Positions 774 through 33,100 of a stretch of 64,000 bases of DNA are shown here, piece by piece. Below the pieces are notes generated by a model, which was not told where the DNA came from, made no database searches, and saw only the letters and a program-made list of their open reading frames with translations. Source of the stretch: Octopus sinensis (taxonomy: Eukaryota); NCBI RefSeq assembly GCF_006345805.1, contig NW_021833764.1:12487-76486 (forward strand). Direction: 5' to 3'. Each line of letters opens with the position of its first letter. The stretch's first letter is position 1. Both the position numbers and the translations under genes were made by a program.

Positions 774-781
774 TATATATA

Positions 782-1191: not shown

Positions 1192-1195
1192 TATA

Positions 1196-3003: not shown

Positions 3004-3029
3004 ATGAGTTTTATAATTTTACTTGTTTC

Positions 3030-9100: not shown

Positions 9101-12100
9101 GAATGATTTTTTTAAATGAATTAAAAATGTATTTCGTCCTGCCGCTAGGTTCTGAGTTCAAATTCCACCACCGAGGTCGACTTTGCCTTTCGTCCTTTCG
9201 GGGTCGATTAAATAAGTACCAGTTACGCACTGGCGTCGATATAATCGACTTAAGTGAATGATTTTTTAAAATGAATTATAAAATGTATTTCGTCTGCCGC
9301 TATGTTCTGAGTTCAAATTCCACCGAGGTCGACTTTGACTTTCGTCCTTTCGGGGTCGATTAAATAAGTACCAGTTACGCACTGGGGTCGATATAATCGA
9401 CATAAGTAAATGATTTTTTTAAATGAAATATAAAATGTGTTTCGTCTGCCGCTACGTTCTGAGTTCAAATTCCACCGAGGTCGACTATGACTTTCGTCCT
9501 TTCGGGGTCGATTAAATAAGTACCAGTTACGAACTGGGGTCGATATAATCGACTTAAGTGAATGATTTTTTTAAATGAAATATAAAATGTATTTCGTCTG
9601 CCGCTACGTTCTGAGTTCAAATTCCACCGAGGTCAACTTTGCCTTTCGTCCTTTCGGGGTCGATTAAATAAGTACCAGTTACGCACTGGGGTCGATATAA
9701 TCGACTTATTAAGTGAATGATTTTTTTAAATGAAATATAAAATGTATTTCGTCTGCCGCTACGTTCTGAGTTCAAATTCAACCGAGGTCGACTTTGCCTT
9801 TCGTCCTTTCGGGGTCGATTAAATAAGTACCAGGTACGCACTGGGTCGATATAATCGACTTAAGTGAATGATTTTTTTAAATGAAATATAAAATGTATTT
9901 CGTCTGCCGCTACGTTCTGAGTTCAAATTCCACCGAGGTCAACTTTGCCTTTCGTCCTTTCGGGGTCGATTAAATAAGTACCAGTTACGCACTGGGGTCG
10001 ATATAATCGACTAAAGTGAATGATTTTTTAAAATGAATTATAAAATGTATTTCGTCTGCCGCTACGTTCTGAGTTCAAATTCCACCGAGGTCGACTTTGC
10101 CTTTCGTCCTTTCGGGGTCGATTAAATAAGTACCAGTTACGCACTGGGGTCGATATAATCGATTTAAGTGAAAGATTTTTTTAAATGAATTATAAAATGT
10201 ATTTCGTCTGCCGCTACGTTTCTGAGTTCAAATTCCACCGAGGTCGAATTTGCCTTCGTCCTTTCGGGGTCGATTAAATAAGTACCAGTTACGCACTGGA
10301 GTCGATATAAACGATTTAAGTGAATGATTTTTTAAAATGAATTATAAAATGTATTTCGTCTGCCGCTATGTTCTGAGTTCAAATTCCACCGAGGTCGACT
10401 TTGCCTTCGTCCTTTCGGGGTCGATTAAATAAGTACCAGTTACGCACTGGGGTCGATATAATCGATTTAAGTGAATGATTTTTTAAAATGAATTATAAAA
10501 TGTATTTCGTCTGCCGCTATGTTCTGAGTTCAAATTCCACCGAGGTTGACTTTGCCTTTCGTCCTTTCGGGGTCGATTAAATAAGTACCAGTTACGCACT
10601 GGGGTCGATATAATCGATTTAAGTGAATGATTTTTTAAAATGAATTATAAAATGTATTTCGTCTGCCGCTATGTTCTGAGTTCAAATTCCACCGAGGTTG
10701 ACTTTGCCTTTCGTCCTTTCGGGGTCGATTAAATAAGTACCAGTTACGCACTGGGGTCGATATAATCGACTTAAGTGAATGATTTTTTAAATGAATTATA
10801 AAATGTATTTCGTCTGCCGCTATGTTCTGAGTTCAAATTCCACCGAGGTCGACTTTGCCTTTCGTCCTTTCGGGGTCGATTAAATAAGTACCAGTTACGC
10901 ACTGGGTCGATATAATCGACTTAAGTGAATGATTTTTTTAAATGAATTAAAAATGTATTTCGTCTGCCGCTCTGTTCTTAGTTCAAATTCCACCGAGGTC
11001 GACTTTGCCTTTCGTACTTTTTCGGGTCGATTAATAAGTACCAGTTACGCCACTGGAGTCGATATAATCGATTTAAGTGAATGATTTTTTTAAATGAATT
11101 ATAAAATGTATTTCGTCTGCCGCTATGTTCTGAGTTCAAATTCCACCGAGGTCGACTTTGCCTTTCGTCTTTCGGGGTCGATTAAATAAGTACCAGTTAC
11201 GCACTGGCGGGTCGATATAATCGACTTAAGTGAATGATTTTTTAAAATGAATTATAAAATGTATTTCGTCTGCCGCTATGTTCTGGGTTCAAATTCCACC
11301 GAGGTCGACTTGCCTTTCGTCCTTTCGGGGTCGATTAAATAAGTACCAGTTACGCACTGGGGTCGATATAATCGACATAAGTGAATGATTTTTTTAAATG
11401 AAATATAAAATGTGTTTCGTCTGCCGCTACGTTCTGAGTTCAATTCCACCGAGGTCGACTATGACTTTCGTCCTTTCGGGGTCGATTAAATAAGTACCAT
11501 TACGCACTGGGGTCGATATAATCGACTTAAGTGAATGATTTTTTTAATGAAATATAAAATGTATTTCGTCTGCCGCTACTTTCTGAGTTCAAATTCCACC
11601 GAGGTCAACTTTGCCTTTCGACCTTTCGGGGTCGATTAAATAAGTACCGTTACGCACTGGGGTCGATATAATCGACTTAAGTGAATGATTTTTTTAAATG
11701 AAATATAAAATGTATTTCGTCTGCCGCAACGTTCTGAGTTCAAATTCCACCGAGGTCGACTTTGCCTTTCATCCTTTCGGGGTCGATTAATAAGTAGCAG
11801 TTACGCACTGGGTCGATATAATCGACTTAAGTGAATGATTTTTTAAATGAAATATAAAATGTATTTCGTCTGCCGCTACGTTCTGAGTTCAAATTCCACC
11901 GAGGTCAACTTTGCCTTTCGTCCTTTCGGGATCGATTAAATAAGTACCATTACGCACTGGGGTCGATATAATCGACTTAAGTGAATGATTTTTTTAAATG
12001 AATTATAAAATGTATTTCGTCTGCCGCTACGTTCTGAGTTCAAATTCCACCGAGGTCGACTTTGCCTTTCGTCCTTTCGGGGTCGATTAAATAAGTACCA

Positions 12101-15100
12101 GTTACGCACTGGGGTCGATATAATCGACTTAAGTGAATGATTTTTTTAAAATGAATATAAAATGTATTTCGTCTGCCGCTATGTTCTGAGTTCAATTCCA
12201 CCGAGGTCGACTTTGCCTTTCGTCCTTTCGGGGTCGATAAATAAGTACCAGTTACGCACTGGGGTCGATATAATCGACTTAAGTGAATGATTTTTTTAAA
12301 TGAATTATAAAATGTATTCGTCGGCTGCCGCTACGTTCTGGGTTCAAATTCCACCGAGGTCGACTTGCCTTTCGTCCTTTCGGGGTCGATTAAATAAGTA
12401 CCAGTTACGCACTGGGTCGATATAATCGATTTAAGTGAATGATTTTTTTAAATGAAATATAAAATGTATTTCGTCTGCCGCTACGTTCTGAGTTCAAATT
12501 CCACCGAGGTCGACTTTGCCTTTCGTCCTTTCGGGGTCGATTAAATAAGTACCAGTTACGCACTGGTGTCGATATAATCGACTTAAGTGAATGATTTTTT
12601 TAAATGAAATATAAAATGTATTTCGTCTGCCGCTACGTTCTGAGTTCAAATTCCACCGAGGTCAACTTCGCCTTTCGTCCTTTCGGGGTCGATTAAATAA
12701 GTTCCAGTTACGCACTGGTGTCGATATAATCGACTTAAGTGAATGATTTTTTTAAATGAAATATAAAATGTATTTCGTCTGCCGCTACGTTCTGAGTTCA
12801 AATTCCACCGAGGTCGACTTTGCCTTTCGTCCTTTCGGGGTCGATTCGATTAATAAGTACAGTTACGCACTGGGTCGATATAATCGACTTAAGTGGATGA
12901 TTTTTTTAAATGAATATAAAATGTATTTCGTCTGCCGCTACGTTCTGAGTTCAAATTCCACCGAGGTCGACTTTGCCTTTCGTCCTTTCGGGGTCGATTA
13001 TAAGTACCAGTTACGCACTGGGGTCGATAAATCGACATAAGTGAATGATTTTTTTAAATGAATTATAAAATGTATTTCGTCTGCCGCTACGTTCTGAGTT
13101 CAATTCCACCGAGGTCGACTTTGCCTTTCGTCCTTTCGGGGTCGATTAAATAAGTACCAGTTACGCACTGGGGTCGATATAATCGACTTAGTGAATGATT
13201 TTTTTAAATGAATATAAAATGTATTTCGTCTGCCGCTATGTTCTGAGTTCAAATTCCACGAGGTCGACTTTGCCTTTCGTCCTTCGGGGTCGATTAAATA
13301 AGTACCAGTTACGCACTGGGGTCGATATAATCGACTTAAGTGATGATTTTTTTTTAATGAATTATAAAATGTATTTCGTCTGCCGCTACGTTCTGAGTTC
13401 AAATTCCACCGAGGTCGACTTGCCTTTCGTCCTTTCGGGGTCGATTAAATAAGTACCAGTTACGCACTGGGTCGATATAATCGATTTAAGTGAATGATTT
13501 TTTTAAATGAAATATAAAATGTATTTCGTCTGCCGCTATGTTCTGAGTTCAAATTCCACCGAGGTCGACTTTGCCTTTCGTCCTTTCGGGGTCGATTAAA
13601 TAAGTACCAGTACGCACTGGGGTCGATTAATCGACTTAAGTGAATGATTTTTTAAATGAATTACAAAATGTATTTCGTCTGCCGCTACGTTCTGAGTTCA
13701 AATTCCACCGAGGTCGACTTTGCTTTCGTCCTTTCGGGGTCGATTAAATAAGTACCAGTTACGCACTGGAGTCGATATAATCGACTTAAGTGAATGATTT
13801 TTTTAATGAAATATAAAATGTATTTCGTCTGCCGCTACGTTCTGAGTTCAAATTCCACCGAGGTCGACTTTGCCTTTCGTCCTTTCAGGGTCGATTAAAT
13901 AAGTACCAGTTACGCACTGGGGTCGATATAATCGACTTAGTGAATGATTTTTTTAAATGAATTATAAAATGTATTTCGTCTGCCGCTACGTTCTGAATTC
14001 AAATTCCACCGAGGTCGACTTGCCTTTCGTCCTTTCGGGGTCGATTAAATAAGTACCAGTTACCACTGGGGTCGATATATCGATTTAAGTGAATGATTTT
14101 TTTAAATGAATAATACATGTATTCGTCTGCCGCTATGTTCTTATTCAAATTCCACCGAGGTCGACTTTGCCTTTCGTCCTTTCGGGGTCGATTAAATAGT
14201 ACCAGTTACGCACTGGGTCGATATAATCGATTTAATGAATGATTTTTTAAAATGAATTATAAAATGTATTCGTCTGCCGCTATGTTCTGAGTTCAAATTC
14301 CACCGAGGTCGACTTTGCCTTTCGTCCTTTCGGGGTCGATTAATAAGTACAGTTACGCACTGGGGTCGATATAATCGACTTAAGTGAATGATTTTTTAAA
14401 TGAAATATAAAATGTATTTCGTCTGTCGCTACGTTCTGAGTTCAAATTCCACCGAGGTCGACTTTGCCTTTCGTCCTTTCGGGGTCGATTAAATAAGTAC
14501 CAGTTACGCACTGGGTCGATAATCGACTTAAGTGAATGATTTTTTAAAATGAATATAAAATTATTTCGTCTGCCGCTATGTTCTGAGTTCAAATTCCACA
14601 CCGAGGTCGACTTTGCCTTCGTCCTTTCGGGGTCGATTAAATAAGTAGCAGTTACGCACTGGGTCGATATAATCGACTTAAGTGAATGATTTTTTAAATG
14701 AAATATAAAATGTATTTCGTCTGCCGCTACGTTCTGAGTTCAAATTCCACAGAGGTCGACTTTGCCTTTCGTCCTTTCGGGGTCGATTAAATAGTACCAG
14801 TTACGCACTGGGGTCGATATAATCGACTTAAGTGAATGATTTTTTTAAATGAATTATAAAATGTATTTCGTCTGCGCTACGTTCTGAGTTCAAATTCCAC
14901 CGAGTCGACTTTGCCTTTCGTCCTTTCGGGGTCGATTAAATAAGTACCAGTTACGCACTGGGGTCGATATAATCGACTTAAGTGAATGATTTTTTTAATG
15001 AAATATAAAATGTATTCGTCTGCCGCTACGTTCTGAGTTCAAATTCCACCAAGGTCGACTTTGCCTTTCGTCCTTTCGGGGTCGATTAATAAGTACCAGT

Positions 15101-18100
15101 TACGCACTGGGGTCGATATAATCGACTTAAGTGAATGATTTTTTAAATGAAATATAAAATGTATTTCGTCTGCCGCTAGTTCTGAGTTCAATTCCACCGA
15201 GGTCGACTTTGCCTTCGTCCTTTCGGGGTCGATTAAATAAGTACCAGTTACGCACTGGGGTCGATATAATCGACTTAAGTGAATGATTTTTTTAAATGAA
15301 TTATAAAATGTATTTCCTCTGCCGCTACGTTCTGAGTTCAAATTCCACCGAGGTCGACTTTGCCTTTCGTCCTTTCGGGCGATTAAATAAGTACCAGTTA
15401 CGCACTGGGGTCGATATAATCGATTTAAGTGAATGATTTTTTTAAATGAAATAAAATGTATTTCGTCTGCCGCTATGTTCTGAGTTCAAATTCCACCGAG
15501 GTCGACTTTGCCTTTCGTCCTTTCGGGGTCGATTAAATAAGTACCAGTTACGCACTGGGGTCGATATAATCGACTTAAGTGAATGATTTTTTTTAATGAA
15601 TTATAAAATGTATTTCGTCTGCCGCTATGTTCTGAGTTCAAATTCCCGAGGTCGACTTTGCCTTTCGTCCTTTCGGGGTCGATTAATAAGTACCAGTTAC
15701 GCACTGGGGTCGATATAATCGACTTAAGTGAATGATTTTTTTAAATGAAATATAAAATGTATTTCGTCTGCCGCTACGTTCTGAGTTCAAATTCCACCGA
15801 GTCGACTTTGCCTTTCGTCCTTTCGGGGTCGATTAAATAAGTACCAGTTACGCACTGGGGTCGATATAATCGACTTAAGTGAATGATTTTTTTAAATGAA
15901 ATATAAAATGTATTTCGTCTGCCGCTACGTTCTGAGTTCAAATTCCACCGAGGTCGACTTTGCCTTTCGTCCTTTCGGGGTCGATTAATAAGTACCAGTT
16001 ACGCACTGGGGTCGATTAATCGACTTAAGTGAATGTTTTTTTAATGAAATATAAAATGTATTCGTCTGCCGCGACGTTCTGAGTTCAAATTCCACCGAGG
16101 TCGACATTGCCTTCGTCCTTTCGGGGTCGATTAAATAAGTAGCAGTTACGCACTGGGTCGATATAATCGACTTAAGTGAATGATTTTTTTAAAATGAATA
16201 ATAAAATGTATTTCGTCTGCCGCTACGTTCTGAGTCAAATTCCACCGAGGTCGACTTTGCCTTTCGTCCTTTCGGGGTCGATTAAATAAGTACCAGTTAC
16301 GCACTGGGTCGATATAATCGACTTAAGTGAATGATTTTTTTAAATGAAATATAAAATGTATTTCGTCTGCCGCTACGTTCTGAGTTCAAATTCCACGAAG
16401 GTCGACTTTGCCTTTCGTCCTTTCGGGGTCGATTAAATAAGTACCAGTTACGCACTGGGGTCGATATAATCGACTAAGTGAATGATTTTTTTAAATGAAA
16501 TATAAAATGTATTCGTTGCCGCTATGTTCTGAGTTCAAATTCCACCGAGGTTCACTTTGCCTTTCGTCCTTTCGGGGTCGATTAAATAAGTACCAGTTAC
16601 GCACTGGGGTCGATATAATCGACTTAAGTGAATGATTTTTTTAAATGAAATATAAAATGTATTTCGTCCGCCGCTCTACGTTCTGAGTTCAAATTCCACC
16701 GAGGTCGACTTTGCCTTCGTCCTTTCGGGGTCGATTAATAAGTACCAGTTACGCACTGGGGTCGATATAATCGACTTAAGTGAATGATTTTTTAAATTAA
16801 ATATAAAATGTATTTCGTCTGCCGCTATGTTCTGAGTTCAAATTCCACCGAGGTCGACTTTGCCTTTCGTCCTTTCGGGGTCGTTAAAATAAGTACCAGT
16901 TACGCACTGGGGTCGATATAATCGACTTAAGTGAATGACTTTTTTAAATGAATATAAAATGTATTTCGTCTGCCGCTACGTTCTGAGTTCAAATTCCACC
17001 GAGGTCGACTTGCCTTTCGTCCTTTCGGGGTCGATTAATAAGTACCAGTTACGCACTGGGGTCGATATAATCGACTTAAGTGAATGATTTTTTTAAAAAA
17101 ATGATTATAAATGTATTTCGTCTGCCGCTCTGTTCTGAGTTCAAATTCCACCACCGGGGTCGACTTGCCTTTCGTCGTCCTTTCGGGGTCGATTAAATAG
17201 TACCAGTTACGCACTGGGGTCGATATAATCGATTTAAGTGAATGATTTTTTAAAATGAATTATAAAATGTATTTCGTCTGCCGCTATGTCTGATTTCAAA
17301 TTCCACCGAGGTCGACTTTGCCTTTCGTCCTTTCGGGGTCGATTAAATAGTACCAGTTACGCACTGGGTCGAATAATCGACTTAAGTGAATGATTTTTTT
17401 AAATGAATTATAAAATGTATTTCGTCTGCCGCTATGTTCTGATTCAAATTCCACCGAGGTCGACTTTGCTTTTGTCCTTTCGGGGTCGATTAATAAGTAC
17501 CAGTTACGCACTGGGGTCGATATAATCGACTTAAGTGAATGATTTTTTTTAATGAATTATAAAATGTATTTCGTCTGCCGCTACGTTTCTGAGGTTCAAT
17601 TCCACCGAGGTCGACTTTGCCTTTCGTCCTTTCGGGGTCGATTAAATAAGTACCAGTTACGCACTGGGGTCGATATAATCGACTTAAGTGAATGATTTTT
17701 TTAAATGAAATATAAAATGTATGTCGTCTGCCGCTACGTTCTGAGTTCAAATTCCACCGAGGTCGACTTTGCCTTTCGTCCTTTCGGGGTCGCTTAAATA
17801 TGTACCAGTTACGCACTGGGGTCGATATAATCGACTTAAGTGAATGATTTTTTTAAATGAAATATAAAATGTAGTTCGTCTGCCGCTATGTTCTGAGTTT
17901 AAATTCCACCGAGGTCGACTTTGCGTTTCGTCCTTTCGGGGTCGATTAAAAAGTACCAGTTACGCACTGGGGTCGATATAATCGACTTAAGTGAATGATT
18001 TTTTTAAATGAATTATAAAATGTATTTCGTCTGCGTCTGCCGTACGTTCTGAGTTCAAATTCCACCGAGTTCGACTTTGCCTTTCGTTCCTTTCGGGGTC

Positions 18101-21100
18101 GATTAAATAAGTACCAGTTACGCACTGGGGTCGATATAATCGACTTAGTGAATGATTTTTTAAATGAAATATAAAATGTATTTCGTCTGCCGCTACGTTC
18201 TGAGTTCAAATTCCACCGAGGTCGACTTGCCTTTCGTCGTTTCGGGGTCGATTAATAAGTACCAGTTACGCACTGGGGTCGATATAATCGACTTAAGTGA
18301 ATGATTTTTTAAATGAAATATAAAATGTATTTCGTCTGCCGCTACGTTCTGAGTTCAAATTCCACCGAGGTCGACTTGCCTTTCGTCCTTTCGGGGTCGA
18401 TTAAATAAGTACCAGTTACGCACTGGGGTCGATATAATCGACTTAAGTGAATGATTTTTTTAAATGAAATATAAAATGTATTTCGTCTGCGCTACGTTCT
18501 GAGTTCAAATTCCACCGAGGTCGACTTTGCCTTTCGTCCTTTCGGGGTCGATTAAATAAGTACCAGTTACGCACTGGGGTCGATATAATCGACTTAAGTG
18601 AATGATTTTTTTAAATGAATATAAAATGTATTTCGTCTGCCGCGACGTTCTGAGTTCAAATTCCACCGAGGTCGACTTTGCCTTTCGTCCTTTCGGGGTC
18701 GATTAATAAGTACCAGTTACGCACTGGGGTCGATATAATCGACTTAAGTGAATGATTTTTTTAAATGAAATATAAAATGTATTTCGTCTGCCGCTACGTT
18801 CTGAGTTCAAATTCCACCGAGGTCGACTTTGCCTTTCGTCCTTTCGGGGTCGATTAAATAAGTACAGTTACGCACTGGGGTCGATATAATCGACTTAAGT
18901 GAATGATTTTTTTAAATGATTATAAAATGTATTTCGTCTGCCGCTACGTTCTGAGTTCAAATTCCACCGAGGTCGACTTTGCCTTTCGTCCTTTCGGGGT
19001 CGATTAAATAAGTACCAGTTACGCACTGGGGTCGATATAATCGACTTAAGTGAATGATTTTTTAAATGAAATATAAAATGTATTTCGTCTGCCGCTACGT
19101 TCTGAGTTCAAATTCCACCAAGGTCGACTTTGCCTTTCGTCCTTTCGGGGTCGATAAATAAGTACCAGTTACGCACTGGGGTCGATATAATCGACTTAAG
19201 TGATGATTTTTTTAAATGAAATATAAAATGTATTCGTCTGCCGCTATGTTCTGAGTTCAAATTCCACCGAGGTCGACTTTGCCTTTCGTCCTTTCGGGGT
19301 CGATTAAATAAGTACCAGTTACGCACTGGGGTCGATATAATCGACTTAAGTGATGATTTTTTTAATGAATTATAAAATGTATTTCCTCTGCCGCTACGTT
19401 CTGAGTTCAAATTCCACCGAGGTCGACTTTGCCTTTCGTCCTTTCGGGGTCGATTAAATAAGTACCAGTTACGCACTGGGGTCGATATATCGACTTAAGT
19501 GAATGATTTTTTAAAATTAAATATAAAATGTATTTCGTCTGCCGCTATGTTCTGAGTTCAAATTCCACCGAGGTCGACTTTGCCTTTCGTCCTTTCGGGG
19601 TCGATTAAATAAGTACCAGTTACGCACTGGGGTCGATATAATCGACTTAAGTGAATGACTTTTTTAAATGAATTATAAAATGTATTTCGTCTGCCGCTAC
19701 GTTCTGAGTTCAAATTCCACCGAGGTCGACTTTGCCTTTCGTCCTTTCGGGGTCGATTAAATAAGTACCAGTTACGCACTGGGGTCGATATAATCGATTT
19801 AAGTGAATGATTTTTTTAAATGAATTATAAAATGTATTTCGTCTGCCGCTATGTTCTGAGTTCAAATTCCACCGAGGTCGACTTTGCCTTTCGTCCTTTC
19901 GGGGTCGATTAAATAAGTACCAGTTACGCACTGGGGTCGATATAATCGACTTAAGTGAATGATTTTTTAGATGAATTATAAAATGTATTTCGTCTGCCGC
20001 TATGTTCTGAGTTCAAATTCCACCGAGGTCGACTTTGCCTTTCGTCCTTTCGGGGTCGATTAAATAAGTACCAGTTACGCACTGGGGTCGATATAATCGA
20101 CTTAAGTGAATGATTTTTTTAAATGAAATATAATATGTATTTCGTCTGCCGCTACGTTCTGAGTTCAAATTCCACCGAGGTCGACTTTGCCTTTCGTCCT
20201 TTCGGGGTCGATTAAATAAGTACCAGTTACGCACTGGGGTCGATATAATCGACTTAAGTGAATGATTTTTTTAAATGAAATATAAAATGTATTTCGTCTG
20301 CCGCTACGTTCTGAGTTCAAATTCCACCGAGGTCGACTTTGCCTTTCGTCCTTTCGGGGTCGATTACATAAGTACCAGTTACGCACTGGGGTCGATATAA
20401 TCGACTTAAGTGAATGATTTTTTTAAATGAAATATAAAATGTATTTCGTCTGCCGCGACGTTCTGAGTTCAAATTCCACCGAGGTCGACTTTGCCTTTCG
20501 TCCTTTCGGGGTCGATTAAATAAGTAGCAGTTACGCACTGGGTCGATATAATCGACTTAAGTGAATGATTTTTTTAAATGAAATATAAAATGTATTTCGT
20601 CTGCCGCTACGTTCTGAGTTCAAATTCCACCGAGGTCGACTTTGCCTTTCGTCCTTTCGGGGTCGATTAAATAAGTACCAGTTACGCACTGGGGTCGATA
20701 TAATCGACTTAAGTGAATGATTTTTTTTAAATGAAATATAAAATGTATTTCGTCTGCCGCTACGTTCTGAGTTCAAATTCCACGAAGGTCGACTTTGCCT
20801 TTCGTCCTTTCGGGGTCGATTAAATAAGTACCAGTTACGCACTGGGGTCGATATAATCGACTTAAGTGAATGATTTTTTTAAATGAAATATAAAATGTAT
20901 TTCGTTTGCCGCTATGTTCTGAGTTCAAATTCCACCGAGGTCGACTTTGCCTTTCGTCCTTTCGGGGTCGTTTAAATAAGTACCAGTTACGCACTGGGGT
21001 CGATATAATCGACTTAAGTGAATGATTTTTTTAAATGAATTATAAAATGTATTTCGTCCGCCGCTACGTTCTGAGTTCAAATTCCACCGAGGTCGACTTT

Positions 21101-24100
21101 GCCTTTCGTCCTTTCGGGGTCGATTAAATAAGTACCAGTTACGCACTGGGGTCGATATAATCGACTTAAGTGAATGATTTTTTAAAATTAAATATAAAAT
21201 GTATTTCGTCTGCCGCTATGTTCTGAGTTCAAATTCCACCGAGGTCGACTTTGCCTTTCGTCCTTTCGGGGTCGATTAAATAAGTACCAGTTACGCACTG
21301 GGGTCGATATAATCGACTTAAGTGAATGACTTTTTTAAATGAATTATAAAATGTATTTCGTCTGCCGCTACGTTCTGAGTTCAAATTCCACCGAGGTCGA
21401 CTTGCCTTTCGTCCTTTCGGGGTCGATTAAATAAGTACCAGTTACGCACTGGGGTCGATATAATCGACTTAGGTGAATGATTTTTTAAAATGAATTATAA
21501 AATGTATTTCGTCTGCCGCTCTGTTCTGAGTTCAAATTCCACCGAGGTCGACTTTGCCTTTCGTCCTTTCGGGGTCGATTAAATAAGTACCAGTTACGCA
21601 CTGGGGTCGATATAATCGATTTAAGTGAATGATTTTTTAAAATGAATTATAAAATGTATTTCGTCGTCTGCCGCTATGTTCTGAGTTCAAATTCCACGAG
21701 GTCGACTTTGCCTTTCGTCCTTTCGGGGTCGATTAAATAAGTACAGTTACGCACTGGGGTCGATATAATCGACTTAAGTGAATGATTTTTTAAATGAAAT
21801 ATAAAATGTATTTCGTCTGCCGCTATGTTCTGAGTTCAAATTCCACCGAGGTCGACTTTGCCTTTTGTCCTTCGGGGTCGATTAAATAAGTACCAGTTAC
21901 GCACTGGGGTCGATATAATCGACTTAAGTGAATGATTTTTTTAAATGAAATATAAAATGTATTTCGTCTGCCGCTACGTTCTGAGTTCAAATTCCACCGA
22001 GGTCGACTTTGCCTTTCGTCCTTTCGGGGTCGATTAAATAAGTACCAGTTACGCACTGGGGTCGATATAATCGACTTAAGTGAATGATTTTTTAAATGAA
22101 ATATAAAATGTATTTCGTCTGCCGCTACGTTCTGAGTTCAAATTCCACCGAGGTCGACTTTGCCTTTCGTCCTTTCGGGGTCGATTAAATAAGTACCAGT
22201 TACGCACTGGGGTCGATATAATCGACTTAAGTGAATGATTTTTTAAATGAAATATAAAATGTATTCGTCTGCCGCTATGTTCTGAGTTTAAATTCCACCG
22301 AGGTCGACTTTGCGTTTCGTCCTTCGGGGTCGATTAAATAAGTACCAGTTACGCACTGGGTCGATATAATCGACTTAAGTGAATGATTTTTTTAATGAAT
22401 TATAAAATGTATTTCGTCTGCCGCTACGTTCTGAGTTCAAATTCCACCGAGGTCGACTTTGCCTTTCGTCCTTTCGGGGTCGATTAAATAAGTACCAGTT
22501 ACGCACTGGGGTCGATATAATCGACTTAAGTGAATGATTTTTTTAATGAATTATAAAATGTATTTCGTCTGCCGCTACGTTCTGAGTTCAAATTCCACCG
22601 AGGTCGACTTTGCCTTTCGTCCTTTCGGGGTCGATTAAATAAGTACCAGTTACGCACTGGGGTCGATATAATCGACTTAAGTGAATGATTTTTTTAAATG
22701 AAATATAAAATGTTCGTCTGCCGCTACGTTCTGAGTTCAAATTCCACCAGGTCGACTTTGCCTTTCGTCCTTTCGGGGTCGATTAAATAAGTACCAGTTA
22801 CGCACTGGGGTCGATATAATCGACTTAAGTGAATGATTTTTTAAATGAAATATAAAATGTATTTCGTCTGCCGCTATGTTCTGAGTTCAAATTCCACCGA
22901 GGTCGACTTTGCCTTCGTCCTTTCGGGGTCGATTAAATAAGTACCAGTTACGCACTGGGGTCGATATAATCGACTTAAGTGAATGATTTTTTAAATGAAT
23001 TATAAAATGTATTTCCTGCCGCTACGTTCTGAGTTCAATTCCACCGAGGTCGACTTTGCCTTTCGTCCTTTCGGGGTCGATTAAATAAGTACCAGTTACG
23101 CACTGGGGTCGATATAATCGACTTAAGTGAATGATTTTTTAAAATTAAATATAAAATGTATTTCGTCTGCCGCTATGTTCTGAGTTCAAATTCCACCGAG
23201 GTCGACTTTGCCTTTCGTCCTTTCGGGGTCGATTAAATAAGTACCAGTTACGCACTGGGGTCGATATAATCGACTTAAGTGAATGATTTTTTAAATGAAT
23301 TATAAAATGTATTTCGTCTGCCGCTACGTTCTGGGTTCAAATTCCACCGAGGTCGACTTGCCTTTCGTCCTTTCGGGGTCGATTAAATAAGTACCAGTTA
23401 CGCACTGGGTCGATATAATCGATTAAGTGAATGATTTTTTAAATGAAATATAAAATGTATTTCGTCTGCCGCTATGTTCTGAGTTCAAATTCCACCGAGG
23501 TCGACTTTGCCTTTCGTCCTTTCGGGGTCGATTAAATAAGTACCAGTTACGCACTGGGGTCGATATAATCGACTTAAGTGAATGATTTTTAGATGAATAT
23601 AAAATGTATTTCGTCTGCCGCTATGTTCTGAGTTCAAATTCCACCGAGTCGACTTTGCCTTTCGTCCTTTCGGGGTCGATTAAATAAGTACCAGTTACGC
23701 ACTGGGGTCGATATAATCGACTTAAGTGAATGATTTTTTAAATGAAATATAATATGTATTTCGTCTGCCGCTACGTTCTGAGTTCAAATTCCACCGAGGT
23801 CGACTTTGCCTTTCGTCCTTTCGGGGTCGATTAATAAGTACCAGTTACGCACTGGGGTCGATAATCGACTTAAGTGAATGATTTTTTTAAATGAAATATA
23901 AAATGTATTTCGTCTGCCGCTACGTTCTGAGTTCAAATTCCACCGAGGTCGACTTTGCCTTTCGTCCTTTCGGGGTCGATTAAATAAGTACCAGTTACGC
24001 ACTGGGGTCGATATAATCGACTTAAGTGAAATTTTTTTTTTAAATGAAATATAAAATGTATTTCGTCTGCCGCGACGTTCTGAGTTCAAATTCACCGAGG

Positions 24101-27100
24101 TCGACTTTGCCTTTCGTCCTTTCGGGGTCGATTAAATAAGTAGCAGTTACGCACGGGTCGATATAATCGACTTAAGTGAATGATTTTTTAAATGAAATAT
24201 AAATGTATTTCGTCTGCCGCTACGTTCTGAGTTCAAATTCCACCGAGGTCGACTTTGCCTTTCGTCCTTTCGGGGTCGATTAAATAAGTACCAGTTACGC
24301 ACTGGGGTATATAATCGACTTAAGTGAATGATTTTTTTAAATGAAATATAAAATGTATTTCGTCTGCCGCTACGTTCTGAGTTCAAATTCCACGAAGGTC
24401 GACTTTGCCTTTCTGTCGTCTTTCGGGTCGATTAAATAAGTACCAGTTACGCACTGGGGTCGATATAATCGACTTAAGTGAATGATTTTTTTAAATGAAT
24501 ATAAAATGTATTTCGTTTGCCGCTATGTTCTGATTCAAATTCCACCGAGGTCGACTTTGCCTTTCGTCCTTTCGGGGTCGTTTAAATAAGTACCAGTTAC
24601 GCACTGGGGTCGATATAATCGACTTAAGTGAATGATTTTTTAAATGAATTATAAAATGTATTTCGTCGCCGCCGCTACGTTCTGAGTTCAATTCCACCGA
24701 GGTCGACTTTGCCTTTCGTCCTTTCGGGGTCGATTAAATAAGTACCAGTTACGCACTGGGTCGATATAATCGACTTAAGTGAATGATTTTTTAAAATTAA
24801 ATATAAAATGTATTTCGTCTGCCGCTATGTTCTGATTCAAATTCCACCGAGGTCGACTTTGCCTTTCGTCCTTTCGGGGTCGATTAAATAAGTACCAGTT
24901 ACGCACTGGGGTCGATATAATCGACTTAAGTGAATGACTTTTTTAAATGAAATTATAATGTATTTCGTCTGCCGCTACGTTCTGAGTTCAAATTCCACCG
25001 AGGTCGACTTGCCTTTCGTCTTCGGGGTCGATTAAATAAGTACCAGTTACGCACTGGGGTCGATATAATCGACTTAGGTGAATGATTTTTTAAATGAATT
25101 ATAAAATGTATTTCGTCTGCCGCTCTGTTCTGAGTTCAAATTCCACCGAGGTCGACTTTGCCTTTCGTCCTTTCGGGGTCGATTAAATAAGTACCAGACG
25201 CACTGGGGGGACGATAATCGATTTAAGTGAATGATTTTTTAAATGAATTATAAAATATTTCGTCTGCCGCTATGTTCTGAGTTCAAATTCCACCGAGGTC
25301 GACTTTGCCTTTCGTCCTTTCGGGGTCGATTAAATAAGTACCAGTTACGCACTGGGGTCGATATAATCGACTTAAGTGAATGATTTTTTAAATGAATTAT
25401 AAAATGTATTTCGTCTGCCGCTATGTTCTGAGTTCAAATTCCACCGAGGTCGACTTTGCCTTTTGTCCTTTCGGGGTCGATTAAATAAGTACCAGTTACG
25501 CACTGGGGTCGATATAATCGACTTAAGTGAATGATTTTTTTTAATGAATTATAAAATGTATTTCGTCTGCCGCTACGTTCTGAGTTCAAATTCCACCGAG
25601 GTCGACTTTGCCTTTCGTCCTTTCGGGGTCGATTAAATAAGTACCAGTTACGCACTGGGGTCGATATAATCGACTTAAGTGAATGATTTTTTTAAATAAA
25701 ATATAAAATGTATTTCGTCTGCCGCTACGTTCTGAGTTCAAATTCCACCGAGGTCGACTTTGCCTTTCGTCCTTTCGGGGTCGATTAAATATGTACCAGT
25801 TACGCACTGGGGTCGATATAATCGACTTAAGTGAATGATTTTTTTAAATGAAATATAAAATGTATTCCGTCTGCCGCTATGTTCTGAGTTTAAATTCCAC
25901 CGAGGTCGACTTTGCGTTTCGTCCTTTCGGGGTCGATTAAATAAGTACCAGTTACGCACTGGGGTCGATATAATCGACTTAAGTGAATGGTTTTTTTAAA
26001 TGAATTATAAAATGTATTTCGTCTGCCGCTACGTTCTGAGTTCAAATTCCACCGAGGTCGACTTTGACTTTCGTCCTTTCGGGGTCGATTAAATAAGTAC
26101 CAGTTACGCACTGGGGTCGATATAATCGACTTAAGTGAATGATTTTTTTAAATGAATTATAAAATGTATTTCGTCTGCCGCTACGTTCTGAGTTCAAATT
26201 CCACCGAGGTCGACTTTGCCTTTCGTCCTTTCGGGGTCGATTAAATAAGTACCAGTTACGCACTGGGGTCGATATAATCGACTTAAGTGAATGATTTTTT
26301 TTAAATGAAATATAAAATGTATTTCGTCTGCCGCTACGTTCTGAGTTCAAATTCCACCAAGGTCGACTTTGCCTTTCGTCCTTTCGGGGTCGATTAAATA
26401 AGTACCAGTTACGCACTGGGGTCGATATAATCGACTTAAGTGAATGATTTTTTTAAATGAAATATAAAATGTATTTCGTCTGCCGCTATGTTCTGAGTTC
26501 AAATTCCACCGAGGTCGACTTTGCCTTTCGTCCTTTCGGGGTCGATTAAATAAGTACCAGTTACGCACTGGGGTCGATATAATCGACTTAAGTGAATGAT
26601 TTTTTTAAATGAATTATAAAATGTACTTCCTCTGCCGCTACGTTCTGAGTTCAAATTCCACCGAGGTCGACTTTGCCTTTCGTCCTTTCGGGGTCGATTA
26701 AATAAGTACCAGTTACGCACTGGGGTCGATATAATCGACTTAAGTGAATGATTTTTAAAATTAAATATAAAATGTATTTCGTCTGCCGCTATGTTCTCAG
26801 TTCAAATTCCACCGAGGTCGACTTTGCCTTTCGTCCTTTCGGGGTCGATTAAATAAGTACCAGTTACGCACTGGGGTCGATATAATCGACTTAAGTGAAT
26901 GACTTTTTTAAATGAATTATAAAATGTATTTCGTCTGCCGCTACGTTCTGAGTTCAAATTCCACCGAGGTCGACTTTGCCTTTCGTCCTTTCGGGGTCGA
27001 TAAATAAGTACCAGTTACGCACTGGGGTCGATATAATCGATTTAAGTGAATGATTTTTTAAAATGAATTATAAAATGTATTTCGTCTGCCGCTATGTTCT

Positions 27101-30100
27101 GAGTTCAAATTCCACCGAGGTCGACTTTGCCTTTCGTCCTTTCGGGGTCGATTAAATAAGTACCAGTTACGCACTGGGGTCGATATAATCGACTTAAGTG
27201 AATGATTTTTTTAAATGAATATTAAAATGTATTTCGTCTGCCGCTATGTTCTGAGTTCAAATTCCACCGAGGTCGACTTGCCTTTCGTCCTTTCGGGGTC
27301 GATTAAATAAGTACCAGTTACGCACTGGGGTCGATATAATCGACTTAAGTGAATGATTTTTTTAATGAAATATAAAATGTATTTCGTCTGCCGCTACGTT
27401 CTGAGTTCAAGTTCAAATTCCACCGAGGTCGACTTTGCCTTTCGTCCTTTCGGGGTCGATTAAATAAGTACCAGTTACGCACTGGGGTCGATATAATCGA
27501 CTTAAGTGAATGATTTTTTTAAATGAAATATAAAATGTATTTCGTCTGCCGCTACGTTCTGAGTTCAAATTCCACCGAGGTCGACTTTGCCTTTCGTCCT
27601 TTCGGGGTCGATTAAATAAGTACCAGTTACGCACTGGGGTCGATATAATCGACTTAAGTGAATGATTTTTTTAAATGAAATATAAAATGTATTTCGTCTG
27701 CCGCGACGTTCTGAGTTCAAATTCCACCGAGGTCGACTTTGCCTTTCGTCCTTTCGGGGTCGATTAAATAAGTAGCAGTACGACCTGGGTCGATATAATC
27801 GACTTAAGTGAATGATTTTTTAAATGAAATATAAAATGTATTTCGTCTGCCGCTACGTTCTGAGTTCAAATTCCACCGAGGTCGACTTTGCCTTTCGTCC
27901 TTTCGGGGTCGATTAAATAAGTACCAGTTACGCACTGGGGTCGATATAATCGACTTAAGTGAATGATTTTTTTTAAATGAATATAAAATGTATTTCGTCT
28001 GCCGCTACGTTCTGAGTTCAAATTCCACGAAGGTCGACTTTGCCTTTCGTCCTTTCGGGGTCGATTAAATAAGTACCAGTTACGCACTGGGGTCGATATA
28101 ATCGACTTAAGTGAATGATTTTTTTAAATGAAATATAAAATGTATTTCGTTTGCCGCTATGTTCTGAGTTCAAATTCCACCGAGGTCGACTTTGCCTTTC
28201 GTCCTTTCGGGGTCGATTAAATAAGTACCAGTTACGCACTGGGGTCGATATAATCGACTTAAGTGAATGATTTTTTTAAATGAATTATAAAATGTATTTC
28301 GTCCGCCGCTACGTTCTGAGTTCAAATTCCACCGAGGTCGACTTTGCCTTTCGTCCTTTCGGGGGCGATTAAATAAGTACCAGTTACGCACTGGGGTCGA
28401 TATAATCGACTTAAGTGAATGATTTTTTAAAATTAAATATAAAATGTATTTCGTCTGCCGCTATGTTCTGAGTTCAAATTCCACCGAGGTCGACTTTGCC
28501 TTTCGTCCTTTCGGGGTCGATTAAATAAGTACCAGTTACGCACTGGGGTCGATATAATCGACTTAAGTGAATGACTTTTTTAAATGAATTATAAAATGTA
28601 TTTCGTCTGCCGCTACGTTCTGAGTTCAAATTCCACCGAGGTCGACTTGCCTTTCGTCCTTTCGGGGTCGATTAAATAAGTACCAGTTACGCACTGGGGT
28701 CGATATAATCGACTTAAGTGAATGATTTTTTTAAATGAATTATAAAATGTATTTCGTCTGCCGCTCTGTTCTGAGTTCAAATTCCACCGAGGTCGACTTT
28801 GCCTTTCGTCCTTTCGGGGTCGATTAAATAAGTACCAGTTACGCACTGGGGTCGATATAATCGATTTAAGTGAATGATTTTTTAAAATGAATTATAAAAT
28901 GTATTTCGTCTGCCGCTATGTTCTGAGTTCAAATTCCACCGAGGTCGACTTTGCCTTTCGTCCTTTCGGGGTCGATTAAATAAGTACCAGTTACGCACTG
29001 GGGTCGATATAATCGACTTAAGTGAATGATTTTTTAAAATGAATTATAAAATGTATTTCGTCTGCCGCTATGTTCTGAGTTCAAATTCCACCGAGGTCGA
29101 CTTTGCCTTTTGTCCTTTCGGGGTCGATTAAATAAGTACCAGTTACGCACTGGGGTCGATATAATCGACTTAAGTGAATGATTTTTTTTAATGAATTATA
29201 AAATGTATTTCGTCTGCCGCTACGTTCTGAGTTCAAATTCCACCGAGGTCGACTTTGCCTTTCGTCCTTTCGGGGTCGATTAAATAAGTACCAGTTACGC
29301 ACTGGGGTCGATATAATCGACTTAAGTGAATGATTTTTTTAAATAAATATAAAATGTATTTCGTCTGCCGCTACGTTCTGAGTTCAAATTCCACCGAGGT
29401 CGACTTTGCCTTTCGTCCTTTCGGGGTCGATTAAATATGTACCAGTTACGCACTGGGGTCGATATAATCGACTTAAGTGAATGATTTTTTTAAATGAAAT
29501 ATAAAATGTATTTCGTCTGCCGCTATGTTCTGAGTTTAAATCCACCGAGGTCGACTTTGCGTTTCGTCCTTTCGGGGTCGATTAAATAAGTACCAGTTAC
29601 GCACTGGGGTCGATATAATCGACTTAAGTGAATGATTTTTTTAAATGAATTATAAAATGTATTTCGTCTGCCGCTACGTTCTGAGTTCAAATTCCACCGA
29701 GGTCGACTTGCCTTTCGTCCTTTCGGGGTCGATTAATAAGTACCAGTTACGCACTGGGGTCGATATAATCGACTTAAGTGAATGATCTTTTAAAATGAAA
29801 TATAAAATGTATTTCGTCTGCCGCTACGTTCTGAGTTCAAATTCCACCGAGGTCGACTTGCCTTTCGTTCTTTCGGGGTCGATTAAATAAGTACCAGTTA
29901 CGCACTGTGGTCGATATAATCGACTTAAGTGAATGATTTTTTAAAATGAATTATAAAATGTATTTCGTCTGCCGCTCTGTTCTAAGTTCAAATTCCACCG
30001 AGGTCGACTTTGCCTTTCGTCCTTTCGGGGTCGATTAAATAAGTACCAGTTACGCACTGTGGTCGATATAATCGATTTAAGTGAATGATTTTTTAAAATG

Positions 30101-33100
30101 AATTATAAAATGTATTTCGTCTGCCGCTATGTTCTGAGTTCAAATTCCACCGAGGTCGACTTTGCCTTTCGTCCTTTCGGGGTCGATTAAATAAGTACCA
30201 GTTACGCACTGGGGTCGATATAATCGACTTAAGTGAATGATTTTTTTAAATGAAATATAAAATGTATTTCGTCTGCCGCTATGTTCTGAGTTCAATTCCA
30301 CCGAGGTCGACTTTGCCTTTCGTCCTTTCGGGGTCGATTAAATAAGTACCAGTTACGCACTGGGGTCGATATAATCGACTTAAGTGAATGATTTTTTTTA
30401 ATGAATTATAAAATGTATTTCGTCTGCCGCTACGTTCTGAGTTCAAATTCCACCGAGGTCGACTTTGCCTTTCGTCCTTTCGGGGTCGATTAAATAAGTA
30501 CCAGTTACGCACTGGGGTCGATATAATCGACTTAAGTGAATGATTTTTTTAAAATGAATATAAAATGTATTTCGTCTGCCGCTACGTTCTGAGTTCAAAT
30601 TCCACCGAGGTCGACTTTGCCTTTCGTCCTTTCGGGGTCGATTAAATAAGTACCAGTTACGCACTGGGGTCGATATAATCGACTTAAGTGAATGATTTTT
30701 TTAAATGAAATATAAAATGTATTTCGTCTGCCGCTATGTTCTGAGTTTAAATTCCACCGAGGTCGACTTTGCGTTTCGTCCTTTCGGGGTCGATTAAATA
30801 AGTACCAGTTACGCACTGGGGTCGATATAATCGACTTAAGTGAATGATTTTTTTAAATGAATTATAAAATGTATTTCGTCTGCCGCTACGTTCTGAGTTC
30901 AAATTCCACCGAGGTCGACTTTGCCTTTCGTCCTTTCGGGGTCGATTAAATAAGTACCAGTTACGCACTGGGGTCGATATAATCGACTTAAGTGAATGAT
31001 TTTTTAAAATGAAATATAAAATGTATTTCGTCTGCCGCTACGTTCTGAGTTCAAATTCCACCGAGGTCGACTTGCCTTTCGTTCTTTCGGGGTCGATTAA
31101 ATAAGTACCAGTTACGCACTGGGGTCGATATAATCGACTTAAGTGAATGATTTTTTAAAATGAATTATAAAATGTATTTCGTCTGCCGCTCTGTTCTAAG
31201 TTCAAATTCCACCGAGGTCGACTTTGCCTTTCGTCCTTTCGGGGTCGATTAAATAAGTACCAGTTACGCACTGGGGTCGATATAATCGATTTAAGTGAAT
31301 GATTTTTTAAAATGAATTATAAAATGTATTTCGTCTGCCGCTATGTTCTGAGTTCAAATTCCACCGAGGTCGACTTTGCCTTTCGTCCTTTCGGGGTCGA
31401 TTAAATAAGTACCAGTTACGCACTGGGGTCGATATAATCGACTTAAGTGAATGATTTTTTTTAAATGAATTAAAATGTATTCGTCTGCCGCTATGTTCTG
31501 AGTTCAAATTCCACCGAGGTCGACTTTGCCTTTTGTCCTTTCGGGGTCGATTAAATAAGTACCAGTTACGCACTGGGGTCGATATAATCGACTTAAGTGA
31601 ATGATTTTTTAAAATGAAATATAAAATGTATTTCGTCTGCCGCTACGTTCTGAGTTCAAATTCCACCGAGGTCGACTTTGCCTTTCGTCCTTTCGGGGTC
31701 GATTAAATAAGTACCAGTTACGCACTGGGGTCGATATAATCGACTTAAGTGAATGATTTTTTTAAATGAAATATAAAATGTATTTCGTCTGCCGCTACGT
31801 TCTGAGTTCAAATTCCACCGAGGTCGACTTTGCCTTTCGTCCTTTCGGGGTCGATTAAATAAGTACCAGTTACGCACTGGGGTCGATATAATCGACATAA
31901 GTGAATGATTTTTTTAAATGAAATATAAAATGTATTTCGTCTGCCGCTACGTTCTGAGTTCAAATTCCACCGAGGTCGACTTTGCCTTTCGTCCTTTCGG
32001 GGTCGATTAAATAAGTACCAGTTACGCATGGGGGTCGATATAATCGACTTAAGTGAATGATTTTTTAAAATGAATTATAAAATGTATTTCGTCTGCCGCT
32101 ATGTTCTGAGTTCAAATTCCACCGAGGTCGACTTTGCCTTTTGTCCTTTCGGGGTCGATTAAATAAGTACCAGTTACGCACTGGGGTCGATATAATCGAC
32201 TTAAGTGAATGATTTTTTAAAATGAATATAAAATGTATTTCGTCTGCCGCTACGTTCTGAGTTCAAATTCCACCGAGGTCGACTTTGCCTTTCGTCCTTT
32301 CGGGGTCGATTAAATAAGTACCAGTTACGCACTGGGTCGATATAATCGACTTAAGTGAATGATTTTTTTAAATGAAATATAAAATGTATTTCGTCTGCCG
32401 CTACGTTCTGAGTTCAAATTCCACCGAGGTCGACTTTGCCTTTCGTCCTTTCGGGGTCGATTAAATAAGTACCAGTTACGCACTGGGTCGATATAATCGA
32501 CTTAAGTGAATGATTTTTTTAAATGAATTATAAAATGTATTTCGTCTGCCGCTACGTTCTGAGTTCAAATTCACACCGAGGTCGACTTTGCCTTTCGTCC
32601 TTTCGGGGTCGATTAAATAAGTACCAGTTACACTGGTGTCGATATAATCGACTTAAGTGAATGATTTTTTTAAATGAAATATAAAATGTATTTCGTCTGC
32701 CGCTACGTTCTGAGTTCAAATTCCACCGAGGTCGACTTTGCCTTTCGTCCTTTCGGGGTCGATTAAATAAGTACCAGTTACGCACTGGGTCGATATAATC
32801 GACTTAAGTGAATGATTTTTTTTAAATGAAATATAAAATGTATTTCGTCTCCCGCTACGTTCTGAGTTCAAATTCCACCGAGGTCGACTTTGCCTTTCGT
32901 CCTTTCGGGGTCGATTAAATAAGTACCAGTTACGCACTGGGGTCGATATAATCGACTTAAGTGAATGATTTTTTTAAATAAATTATAAAATGTATTTCGT
33001 CTGCCGCTACGTTCTGAGTTCAAATTCCACCGAGGTCGACTTTGCCTTTCGTCCTTTCGGGGTCGATTAAATAAGTACCAGTTACGCACTGGGGTCGATA

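What the first reader, a model, noticed from the sequence alone, without database searches (positions are those of the whole stretch)
15000..30000. 24-monomer (~3.62 kb) higher-order repeat built from 11 + 13 monomers
Seen: rare variants recur at fixed distances. AAAATTAAATAT occurs at 19513/23141/26757 and 21184/24793/28429 (steps 3609-3636 bp; offset between the two series 1671 bp = 11 monomers). GCCGCGACG with AGTAGCAG occurs at ~20455/24071/27703, CCACGAAGG at ~20781/24391/28027, and GAGTTTAAAT at ~22287/25888/29534. The preceding step is ~4390 bp (29 monomers). Knowledge: higher-order repeats typify primate alpha satellite and other actively homogenising centromeric arrays. I know of no description for cephalopods but cannot verify that.
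Basis: seen in the sequence. Interest (0 to 1): 0.7.

Follow-up and report, generated by a model that had tools for sequence, protein, structure and literature searches.

The report
Local 24-monomer repeat in octopus satellite
A 33-kb tandem array of a 152-bp satellite, itself derived from an octopus SINE, contains a real but short and low-contrast 24-monomer higher-order repeat made by block duplications; this is ordinary satellite behaviour and says nothing yet about a centromere.

Summary
Every quoted k-mer sits at the stated coordinates with the stated steps. The array is 217 uninterrupted 152-bp monomers (3172-36017). Monomers 106-177 form three tandem 24-monomer units (B, C, D). An older fourth copy (A, monomers 77-100) lies 29 monomers upstream. 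An 8-monomer tail block is re-duplicated downstream.

At lag 24, substitution differences per monomer pair fall from 3.99±0.25 to 1.52. Thirty-six derived substitutions are shared by all three units, against 5 in lag-23 and lag-25 controls. Rare-variant sharing at lag 24 has z=10.5 over the whole array and 19 within the block. The 11+13 substructure is partly real: unit positions 1-7 match 12-18, and lags 11-13 recur elsewhere in the array.

The repeat is local, with 3-4 copies, and low-contrast: monomers are about 97% alike and units about 99.4% by substitutions. Indels ignore the period and look like homopolymer noise.

At least nine copies occur in 62 kb of Octopus bimaculoides.

The best explanation is repeated out-of-register exchange in a young SINE-derived satellite. 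A centromeric role is untested. This is a new member of a known kind.

The parts
2999..3171 (+). Degenerate monomer-like copy at the left edge. It is a 5'-truncated SINE copy that still carries the SINE 3' tail (3126-3171), which the array monomers lack.
   Evidence: BLAST of the monomer to 3034-3082, 90%. Alignment with O. bimaculoides SINE copies. Pairwise alignment to monomer positions 5-155.
3172..36017 (+). Uninterrupted head-to-tail array of a 152-bp satellite: 217 full monomers plus a 36-bp partial one. Mean pairwise substitution difference is about 3%.
   Evidence: TRF period 152, 217.2 copies, 95% matches. Monomer decomposition with lengths 147-158 and no insertions. Pairwise substitutions 4.6 per monomer.
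3172..5903 (+). Separate 11-monomer-offset duplication at the left end of the array (monomers 1-7 against 12-18).
   Evidence: Edit distances 0,4,2,0,1,0,1 at lag 11. 396-bp exact repeat at shift 1669.
14678..18292 (+). Copy A of the 24-monomer unit (monomers 77-100). It is older and lies 29 monomers upstream of B.
   Evidence: Low substitution differences at lag 29 for monomers 77-92 and 97-100. 28 derived substitutions shared by A, B, C and D, with 44 private to A. A-B identity 96.6%. Column-66 and column-194 strings match B-D.
18293..19045 (+). Five extra near-consensus monomers (101-105) that lengthen the first step to 29 monomers.
   Evidence: column 66 reads 'CCCCC'.
19046..22676 (+). 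Copy B of the 24-monomer unit (monomers 106-129, 3631 bp).
22677..26282 (+). Copy C of the 24-monomer unit (monomers 130-153, 3606 bp). It has the most private indels.
26283..29924 (+). Copy D of the 24-monomer unit (monomers 154-177, 3642 bp).
19046..21773 (+). Internal 11-monomer-offset correspondence inside the unit, shown for copy B: positions 1-7 (19046-20101) against positions 12-18 (20709-21773).
   Evidence: Shared derived substitutions: 19 at offset 11/13 against 7-12 at other offsets. The column-66 pattern CTCTCTT occurs twice per unit. Rare 30-mers are shared at lag 11 by monomers 108-110, 132-133 and 157-158.
28714..31896 (+). The last 8 monomers of unit D (170-177) are repeated at 178-185 and partly at 186-190. 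This is a nested 8-monomer repeat and explains GAGTTTAAAT at 29532 and 30743.
   Evidence: Lag-8 substitutions 3,0,3,0,4,0,1,2 then 1,0,2,3,3. Column 66 reads TTTCCTCC twice. A>C at column 65 in monomers 170/178/186.
36123..48790 (+). Neighbouring strand-asymmetric satellite, abutting the 152-bp array (context, not part of the HOR). Its units are TGAATGAA and the 16-mer AATGAGTGAATGAGCG. The 31-bp non-SINE spacer of the 152-bp monomer (GTGAATGA...AAATGAAT) resembles its motif.
   Evidence: TRF, GC skew about 0.7, junction sequence, kb-scale internal shifts.

Best explanation
This is a young, uninterrupted 33-kb array of a 152-bp satellite. Each monomer is an internal ~118-bp fragment of an abundant octopus tRNA-like SINE (B-box region plus core) joined to a ~31-bp AT-rich spacer.

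The array has grown and been reshuffled by out-of-register exchange or duplication of multi-monomer blocks, through unequal sister-chromatid or homologue crossing-over, or replication or repair template switching.

Inferred order of events:
1. An ~11-13-monomer register left its trace across the whole array.
2. An 11-step and a 13-step together formed a 24-monomer block.
3. That block was duplicated once, giving copy A, which later gained or kept 5 extra monomers.
4. It was then amplified to three adjacent copies B, C and D, which differ by 0.5-0.7% in substitutions.
5. The last 8 monomers of D were re-duplicated.

The result is a local, nascent higher-order repeat. It is a by-product of tandem-array dynamics, and no function needs to be invoked.

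Shown: the anatomy, the periodicities and the SINE homology. Inferred: the exchange mechanism and the order of events.
For: - Substitution differences per monomer pair within monomers 106-177 are 1.52 at lag 24 and 1.29 at lag 48, against 3.99±0.25 at other lags.
- Derived substitutions in the B/C/D triples: 36 shared by all three, 43 private and 9 shared by two. Controls at lag 23 and lag 25 give 5 shared by all three.
- Four-copy pattern: 28 shared by all four, 6 by B, C and D only, 44 private to A.
- Unit identities are 97.4-98.3% overall, with only 17-26 mismatches per 3.6 kb.
- The C/T strings at two common polymorphic columns are identical in B, C and D and nearly identical in A.
- Nested lags: 8 at monomers 170-190; 11 at monomers 1-7; 11 and 13 enriched outside the block with z=4.1-5.2.
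- There are no foreign insertions in the array.
- SINE origin: monomer positions 36-153 match at least nine dispersed sites in 62 kb of O. bimaculoides chromosome CM046612.1 at 74-93% identity, plus two other contigs. The alignment shows a full element with a 5' head and a 3' tail that the monomer lacks.
- TE- and SINE-derived satellites, and HORs as units of co-amplified monomers, are established (PMC12692304; PMC10702118; PMC5615363).
Against: - No reads are available, so copy number and the private differences cannot be validated.
- Indels (87 private against 1 shared by B, C and D) are regionally clustered and sit in homopolymers. Consensus quality is therefore uneven, and some private substitutions may also be errors.
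- The exchange mechanism is inferred from the pattern alone.
- The order of events rests on small counts, for example 6 substitutions shared by B, C and D only.
- The 11+13 origin is supported for only 7 of the 11 positions.
Confidence: 0.8

Rival explanations
1. Assembly artefact. The three 24-monomer units, or some of them, were created by the assembler. This could be mis-threading of a repeat graph or stacking of the two haplotypes in tandem, with the differences between copies being heterozygosity plus consensus errors.
For: - Substitution divergence between units (0.5-0.7%) is of the order of the octopus heterozygosity reported for other species (0.95-1.1%, PMC9795677).
- Private indels are numerous, homopolymer-bound and regionally clustered, which shows imperfect consensus in this array.
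Against: - There are three young copies plus an older one plus nested 8-monomer repeats, which is more than two haplotypes can give.
- Nine substitutions are shared by exactly two of the three units, in all three combinations. Each unit is therefore distinct in a structured, non-random way.
- The longest exact self-match is only 396 bp, and within the block only 311-351 bp.
- Similar block duplications occur elsewhere in this array and in the neighbouring satellite.
Confidence: 0.08
2. Functional centromeric HOR. The 152-bp family is the octopus centromeric or pericentromeric satellite, and the 24-mer reflects kinetochore-linked homogenisation as in primate alpha satellite.
For: - The monomer is of roughly nucleosomal length (152 bp).
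- The array is uninterrupted and young, and the HOR organisation is real.
- The region is repeat-rich, with a second satellite adjacent.
- Cephalopod centromere sequences appear undescribed in the searched library.
Against: - The array is only 33 kb and ends in non-satellite, TE-rich DNA on both sides within 64 kb.
- There are only 3-4 units and no array-wide HOR.
- Local multi-monomer duplications arise in any tandem array.
- The protein-space search found no other tandem copies of this monomer, which is weak evidence.
- SINE-derived satellites in squamates are low-copy and probably subtelomeric (PMC10702118).
Confidence: 0.07
3. Chance or mutational hot spots. The recurring rare variants are independent hits at mutable sites (for example CpG) that happen to fall at regular spacing.
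For: Some variants are CpG transitions, for example the C/T at alignment column 66 in GCTACG/GCTATG.
Against: - Many different columns show the same lag.
- z=10.5-19 against permutation.
- The lag-23 and lag-25 controls collapse.
- Linked multi-variant haplotypes recur, for example columns 19, 24, 27 and 66 together in monomers 109/120/133/144/157/168.
Confidence: 0.01

Closest known systems
Primate alpha-satellite higher-order repeats
   Same: - Tandem monomers of about nucleosomal size.
- A multi-monomer unit is repeated head to tail.
- Position-equivalent monomers are more alike than neighbours.
- A unit size of 24 falls in the 2-34 range quoted in PMC5615363.
- A nested or variant unit length is present (29-mer, 8-mer tail).
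   Different: - Within-unit monomers are about 97% identical here, against 70-90% in alpha satellite.
- There are only 3-4 units rather than hundreds to thousands.
- The repeat is not array-wide, and no chromosome-specific family has been shown.
- There is no centromere evidence.
- The sequence is unrelated and is SINE-derived.
Non-primate and invertebrate HORs and complex HORs (beetles, mouse, bovids and others, as reviewed in PMC5615363 and PMC8122249)
   Same: They show that multimeric periodicity arises wherever blocks of adjacent monomers are co-amplified. The mechanism matches the one inferred here, and local or short HORs are common.
   Different: Most described invertebrate HORs are dimers or trimers of clearly distinct monomer subtypes. 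This one is a long (24-monomer) unit of barely differentiated monomers, visible only through rare variants.
SINE-derived satellites of squamate reptiles (sSat; Vassetzky et al. 2023, PMC10702118)
   Same: The tandem repeat unit is a portion of a tRNA-related SINE that is also dispersed in the genome, and amplification is modest compared with classical satellites.
   Different: - The host phylum and the SINE family are different.
- The unit here includes a ~31-bp non-SINE spacer.
- A 217-copy array with higher-order structure was not among the points I read in that paper. I read only its abstract, outline and background.
Octopus tRNA-derived SINEs (OR1/OR2/OK of Ohshima & Okada 1994; the tRNA-Core and tRNA-Deu families that dominate octopus repeatomes, PMC8967140)
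   Same: The monomer core matches a dispersed ~250-bp element that is very frequent in O. bimaculoides (at least nine copies in 62 kb). That element has a head carrying A-box-like and B-box-like motifs.
   Different: - The family was not named here, because no Repbase or Dfam library was available.
- ARAGORN and Rfam do not call the head a tRNA.
- The resemblance of the core to the CORE/MIR domain is from memory only.

Membership tests
Higher-order repeat (HOR) satellite organisation | Head-to-tail array of a basic monomer | tested here: met
   217 monomers of 147-158 bp with no gaps or insertions.
Higher-order repeat (HOR) satellite organisation | A block of several adjacent monomers is itself repeated in tandem | tested here: met
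   Units B, C and D (19046-29924) are contiguous, at 3631, 3606 and 3642 bp. Copy A lies 29 monomers upstream.
Higher-order repeat (HOR) satellite organisation | Position-equivalent monomers of different units are more similar than monomers within a unit | tested here: met
   1.52 against 3.99±0.25 substitutions per pair. 52 of 72 monomers have their homologue among their nearest neighbours.
Higher-order repeat (HOR) satellite organisation | Strong contrast: within-unit monomer identity about 70-90%, inter-unit identity above 95% (PMC5615363, PMC8122249) | tested here: not met
   Inter-unit identity is 97.4-98.3%, which meets the second half. Within-unit monomers are about 97% identical by substitutions, or about 96% with indels.
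Higher-order repeat (HOR) satellite organisation | The unit is reiterated many times and homogenised across the array | tested here: not met
   There are 3 young copies and 1 older one. The rest of the array shows only lags 8 and 11-14.
Centromeric satellite | Association with CENP-A/CENH3 chromatin or the primary constriction | not testable with these tools
   No chromatin, FISH or chromosome-position data were available. The array is 33 kb and bounded by TE-rich DNA.
SINE-derived satellite | The monomer is homologous to part of an element that is dispersed (non-tandem) in the genome | tested here: met
   Monomer positions 36-153 hit at least nine separate sites in O. bimaculoides L001 (74-93% identity), and also L002 and L003. 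The flanks of those copies are unrelated to each other.
SINE-derived satellite | The dispersed element is a SINE: pol III head (tRNA-like A and B boxes), body and tail | tested here: inconclusive
   The consensus head GGCGGCGAGCTGGCAGAATCGTTAGC...GAGTTCAAATTCC shows A-box-like and B-box-like motifs, and the copies share a 3' tail. ARAGORN and Rfam find no tRNA. Target-site duplications were not examined.

The most novel reading that the evidence does not exclude
The 152-bp SINE-derived family is the centromeric or pericentromeric satellite of this octopus, and the nested 8/11/13/24-monomer periodicities record ongoing kinetochore-linked homogenisation. That would make this the first sequence-level description of a cephalopod centromere repeat, one born from the lineage-specific SINE expansion.
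Probability: 0.07. Interest if true: 0.7.

Novelty: new member of a known kind. Interest (0 to 1): 0.33.

Why it matters
This is a clean, fully resolved example of how a tandem array builds higher-order structure. The steps go from an 11-13-monomer register to a 24-monomer unit, to three or four tandem units, to a nested 8-monomer repeat. The satellite's birth from an abundant octopus SINE can also be read directly.

SINEs are the largest TE class in octopus genomes (PMC8967140). My searches of the held library found no satellitome or centromere study for cephalopods. A catalogue of such SINE-derived arrays would therefore fill a gap and give probes for octopus cytogenetics.

By itself the finding is expected satellite behaviour and does not change any concept.

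Tried and rejected
1. Gap-inclusive MAFFT distances and a whole-array lag profile almost hid the signal. Separating substitutions from indels was necessary.
2. A monomer dot plot on edit distance was uninformative, because most monomers are near consensus.
3. ARAGORN on the window and on L001, and Rfam at gathering threshold on the window and at E<=1 on one SINE copy, gave no tRNA or other RNA family.
4. A scan of metagenome contigs for the monomer junction TCGACTTAAGTGAATGA gave 13 single hits. None contains the monomer, so they are chance matches.
5. A full-text search for monomer substrings found only unrelated primer or sequence hits.
6. Megablast self-comparison of the second satellite returned almost nothing. 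It was replaced by rare-k-mer shift counts.
8. Species identification beyond 'octopod' was not pursued, because another whole-database protein search would not change the verdict.
9. Chance periodicity was considered and rejected.
Full report
**Observation.** TRF reports one 152-bp tandem array from 3172 to 36017, with 217 copies and 95% matches. The two AAAATTAAATAT series have steps of 3609-3636 bp and are offset by 1652-1672 bp. GCCGCGACG, AGTAGCAG, CCACGAAGG and GAGTTTAAAT recur at about 3.6 kb. Each has one earlier occurrence about 4.39 kb upstream. A consensus-guided decomposition gives 217 monomers of 147-158 bp with no foreign insertions. So 3.62 kb is 24 monomers, 1.67 kb is 11, and 4.39 kb is 29.

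**Is it more than chance?** Yes.
- Rare variants (2-12 carriers) shared between monomers peak at lag 24: 36 observed, 7.2 expected, z=10.5. Further peaks are at lags 48 (z=7.8), 11 (7.0), 53 (6.5) and 77 (6.1).
- Restricted to monomers 77-177, lag 24 reaches z=19.
- An alignment-free count of rare 30-mers gives the same ranking: 24, 11, 48, 13, 29.
- Within monomers 106-177, substitution differences per monomer pair are 1.52 at lag 24 and 1.29 at lag 48, against 3.99±0.25 at other lags.
- 52 of 72 monomers have their lag-24/48 homologue among their nearest neighbours, against 1-11 for control lags.
- In the B/C/D triples, 36 derived substitutions are shared by all three, against 5 when the register is slid to 23 or 25.

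**Anatomy of the block.**
- Copy A is monomers 77-100 (14678-18292).
- Five extra near-consensus monomers follow (18293-19045).
- Copy B is 19046-22676, copy C is 22677-26282 and copy D is 26283-29924.
- The C/T state at alignment column 66 reads CTCTCTTCCCCCTCTCTTTCCTCC identically in B, C and D, and almost identically in A. Column 194 is identical in all four.
- Unit identities are B-C 97.6%, B-D 98.25%, C-D 97.4% and A-B 96.6%. There are only 17-26 mismatches per 3.6 kb among B, C and D.
- With A included, 28 derived substitutions are shared by all four copies, 6 by B, C and D only, and 44 are private to A. So A is older.
- After D, its last eight monomers (170-177) recur at 178-185 and partly at 186-190. 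This explains the extra GAGTTTAAAT at 30743.

**The 11+13 claim.** It is partly right.
- In the consensus unit, positions 1-7 correspond to positions 12-18. There are 19 shared derived substitutions at cyclic offset 11/13, against 7-12 at every other offset. The column-66 motif CTCTCTT occurs twice per unit.
- Positions 8-11 against 19-22 do not correspond.
- Lags 11-13 are also enriched outside the block: monomers 1-76 give z=5.2 at lag 13 and 4.1 at lag 11, and monomers 178-217 give z=4.9 at lag 11.
- This includes a 396-bp exact repeat at shift 1669 at the left end.
- An 11-13-monomer register therefore pervades the array, and the 24-mer plausibly joins one step of each.

**How strong is the HOR?** It is weak by the classical yardstick.
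- Reviews define HORs by 70-90% identity among monomers of a unit and more than 95% between units, reiterated many times (PMC5615363; PMC8122249).
- Here monomers are about 97% identical by substitutions, and there are 3 young units plus 1 older one.
- The rest of the array is not organised in 24-mers.
- It is best called a local, nascent HOR, or a series of nested block duplications.

**Indels.** They behave differently from substitutions.
- Only one indel is shared by B, C and D, against 87 private ones.
- They sit in T7, G4 and A3 runs.
- They cluster regionally, around monomers 60-108 and 123-147.
- Either homopolymer slippage is very fast, or consensus quality is uneven, as in a long-read assembly. 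This bears on the artefact rival.
- Against that rival, nine substitutions are shared by exactly two of the three units, in all combinations. The longest exact self-match in the block is 311-351 bp. Three young units, an older one and nested repeats also exceed what haplotype stacking could give.

**What the monomer is.**
- A translated two-monomer ORF hits only Octopus bimaculoides 'uncharacterized proteins' and unnamed contigs, each over about one third of the query.
- Fetching one such locus gave 62 kb of O. bimaculoides chromosome CM046612.1. Monomer positions 36-153 match at least nine separate sites there at 74-93% identity, and also match two other contigs.
- The alignment shows a ~250-bp dispersed element. 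Its 5' head is GGCGGCGAGCTGGCAGAATCGTTAGCACGCC...GAGTTCAAATTCC, with A-box-like and B-box-like motifs. It also has a body and a 3' tail.
- The satellite monomer keeps only the B-box region and the body, up to CGACTTAA. It adds a 31-bp AT-rich spacer, GTGAATGATTTTTTTAAATGAATTATAAAAT.
- The left edge of the array (2999-3171) is a degenerate monomer-like copy that still has the SINE tail.
- The right edge ends inside the spacer and runs into a 12.7-kb TGAATGAA-type satellite whose motif the spacer resembles.
- ARAGORN and Rfam do not recognise the head as a tRNA, so 'tRNA-derived' is an inference from motifs.
- Octopus repeatomes are dominated by tRNA-Core and tRNA-Deu SINEs (PMC8967140), and OR1 of octopus is a CORE-SINE (PMC4824008). 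I could not name the family.

**Mechanism (inferred).** Out-of-register exchange between sister chromatids or homologues, or template switching during replication or repair, duplicates blocks whose length equals the register shift. Repeated events with shifts of 11-13, 24, 29 and 8 monomers account for everything seen. The array has no insertions, and its outermost monomers are at consensus. This fits a young or actively turning-over array. No function needs to be invoked.

**Comparison with known systems and novelty.**
- HORs are known well beyond primates, in beetles, mouse, bovids and others.
- TE- and SINE-derived satellites are known (PMC12692304; squamate sSats, PMC10702118).
- My library searches found no cephalopod satellitome, HOR or centromere paper. 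The cephalopod repeat paper I read does not mention satellites or tandem repeats at all.
- So this is a new member of known kinds: a SINE-derived satellite with a local HOR, in a clade where such repeats are undescribed.
- A centromeric role is untested and, given a 33-kb array bounded by TE-rich DNA, unlikely.

**Verdict.** The feature is real with about 0.8 confidence pending read-level validation. It is ordinary in kind and of modest interest.

Noticed in passing
window 36123-48790: A second, strongly strand-asymmetric satellite abuts the 152-bp array. Its units are TGAATGAA and the 16-mer AATGAGTGAATGAGCG, with GC skew about 0.7. Rare 40-mers recur at shifts of about 2928, 3696, 990 and 768 bp, so it too contains kb-scale internal block duplications.
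   Followed up: partly
window 3172-36017, especially about 11.7-19.3 kb and 21.6-25.4 kb: Single-base indels in T7, G4 and A3 runs are regionally clustered and do not follow the 24-monomer period (1 shared against 87 private). This suggests uneven consensus quality of a long-read assembly, or very fast slippage.
   Followed up: partly
window 51628-52026, 54704-55101, 61559-61973 (-), 63823-64000; also 55361-55764 / 63273-63662: Two other dispersed repeats of about 400 bp occur in several copies and both orientations at 91-93% identity. The first is also present many times in the O. bimaculoides locus L001.
   Followed up: partly
window 56784-57074 (-): A reverse-transcriptase fragment (Pfam RVT_1, E=6.8e-13), probably a decayed non-LTR retrotransposon. 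The adjacent ORFs are broken.
   Followed up: partly
window 8-1208: A 401-bp unit repeated 3 times in tandem (94% matches). It is unrelated to the 152-bp monomer.
   Followed up: no
window 52808-53558; 59950-60000 and 60208-60258: A (TTA) tract of about 250 copies, and a 23-bp motif present 2.2 times in each of two inverted arms about 200 bp apart (possible small hairpin or MITE-like element).
   Followed up: no
L001 33667-33849 (O. bimaculoides CM046612.1): Two partial copies of the same SINE lie side by side across a run of N. This could be a small tandem duplication of the SINE in another octopus, or a scaffold gap artefact.
   Followed up: no
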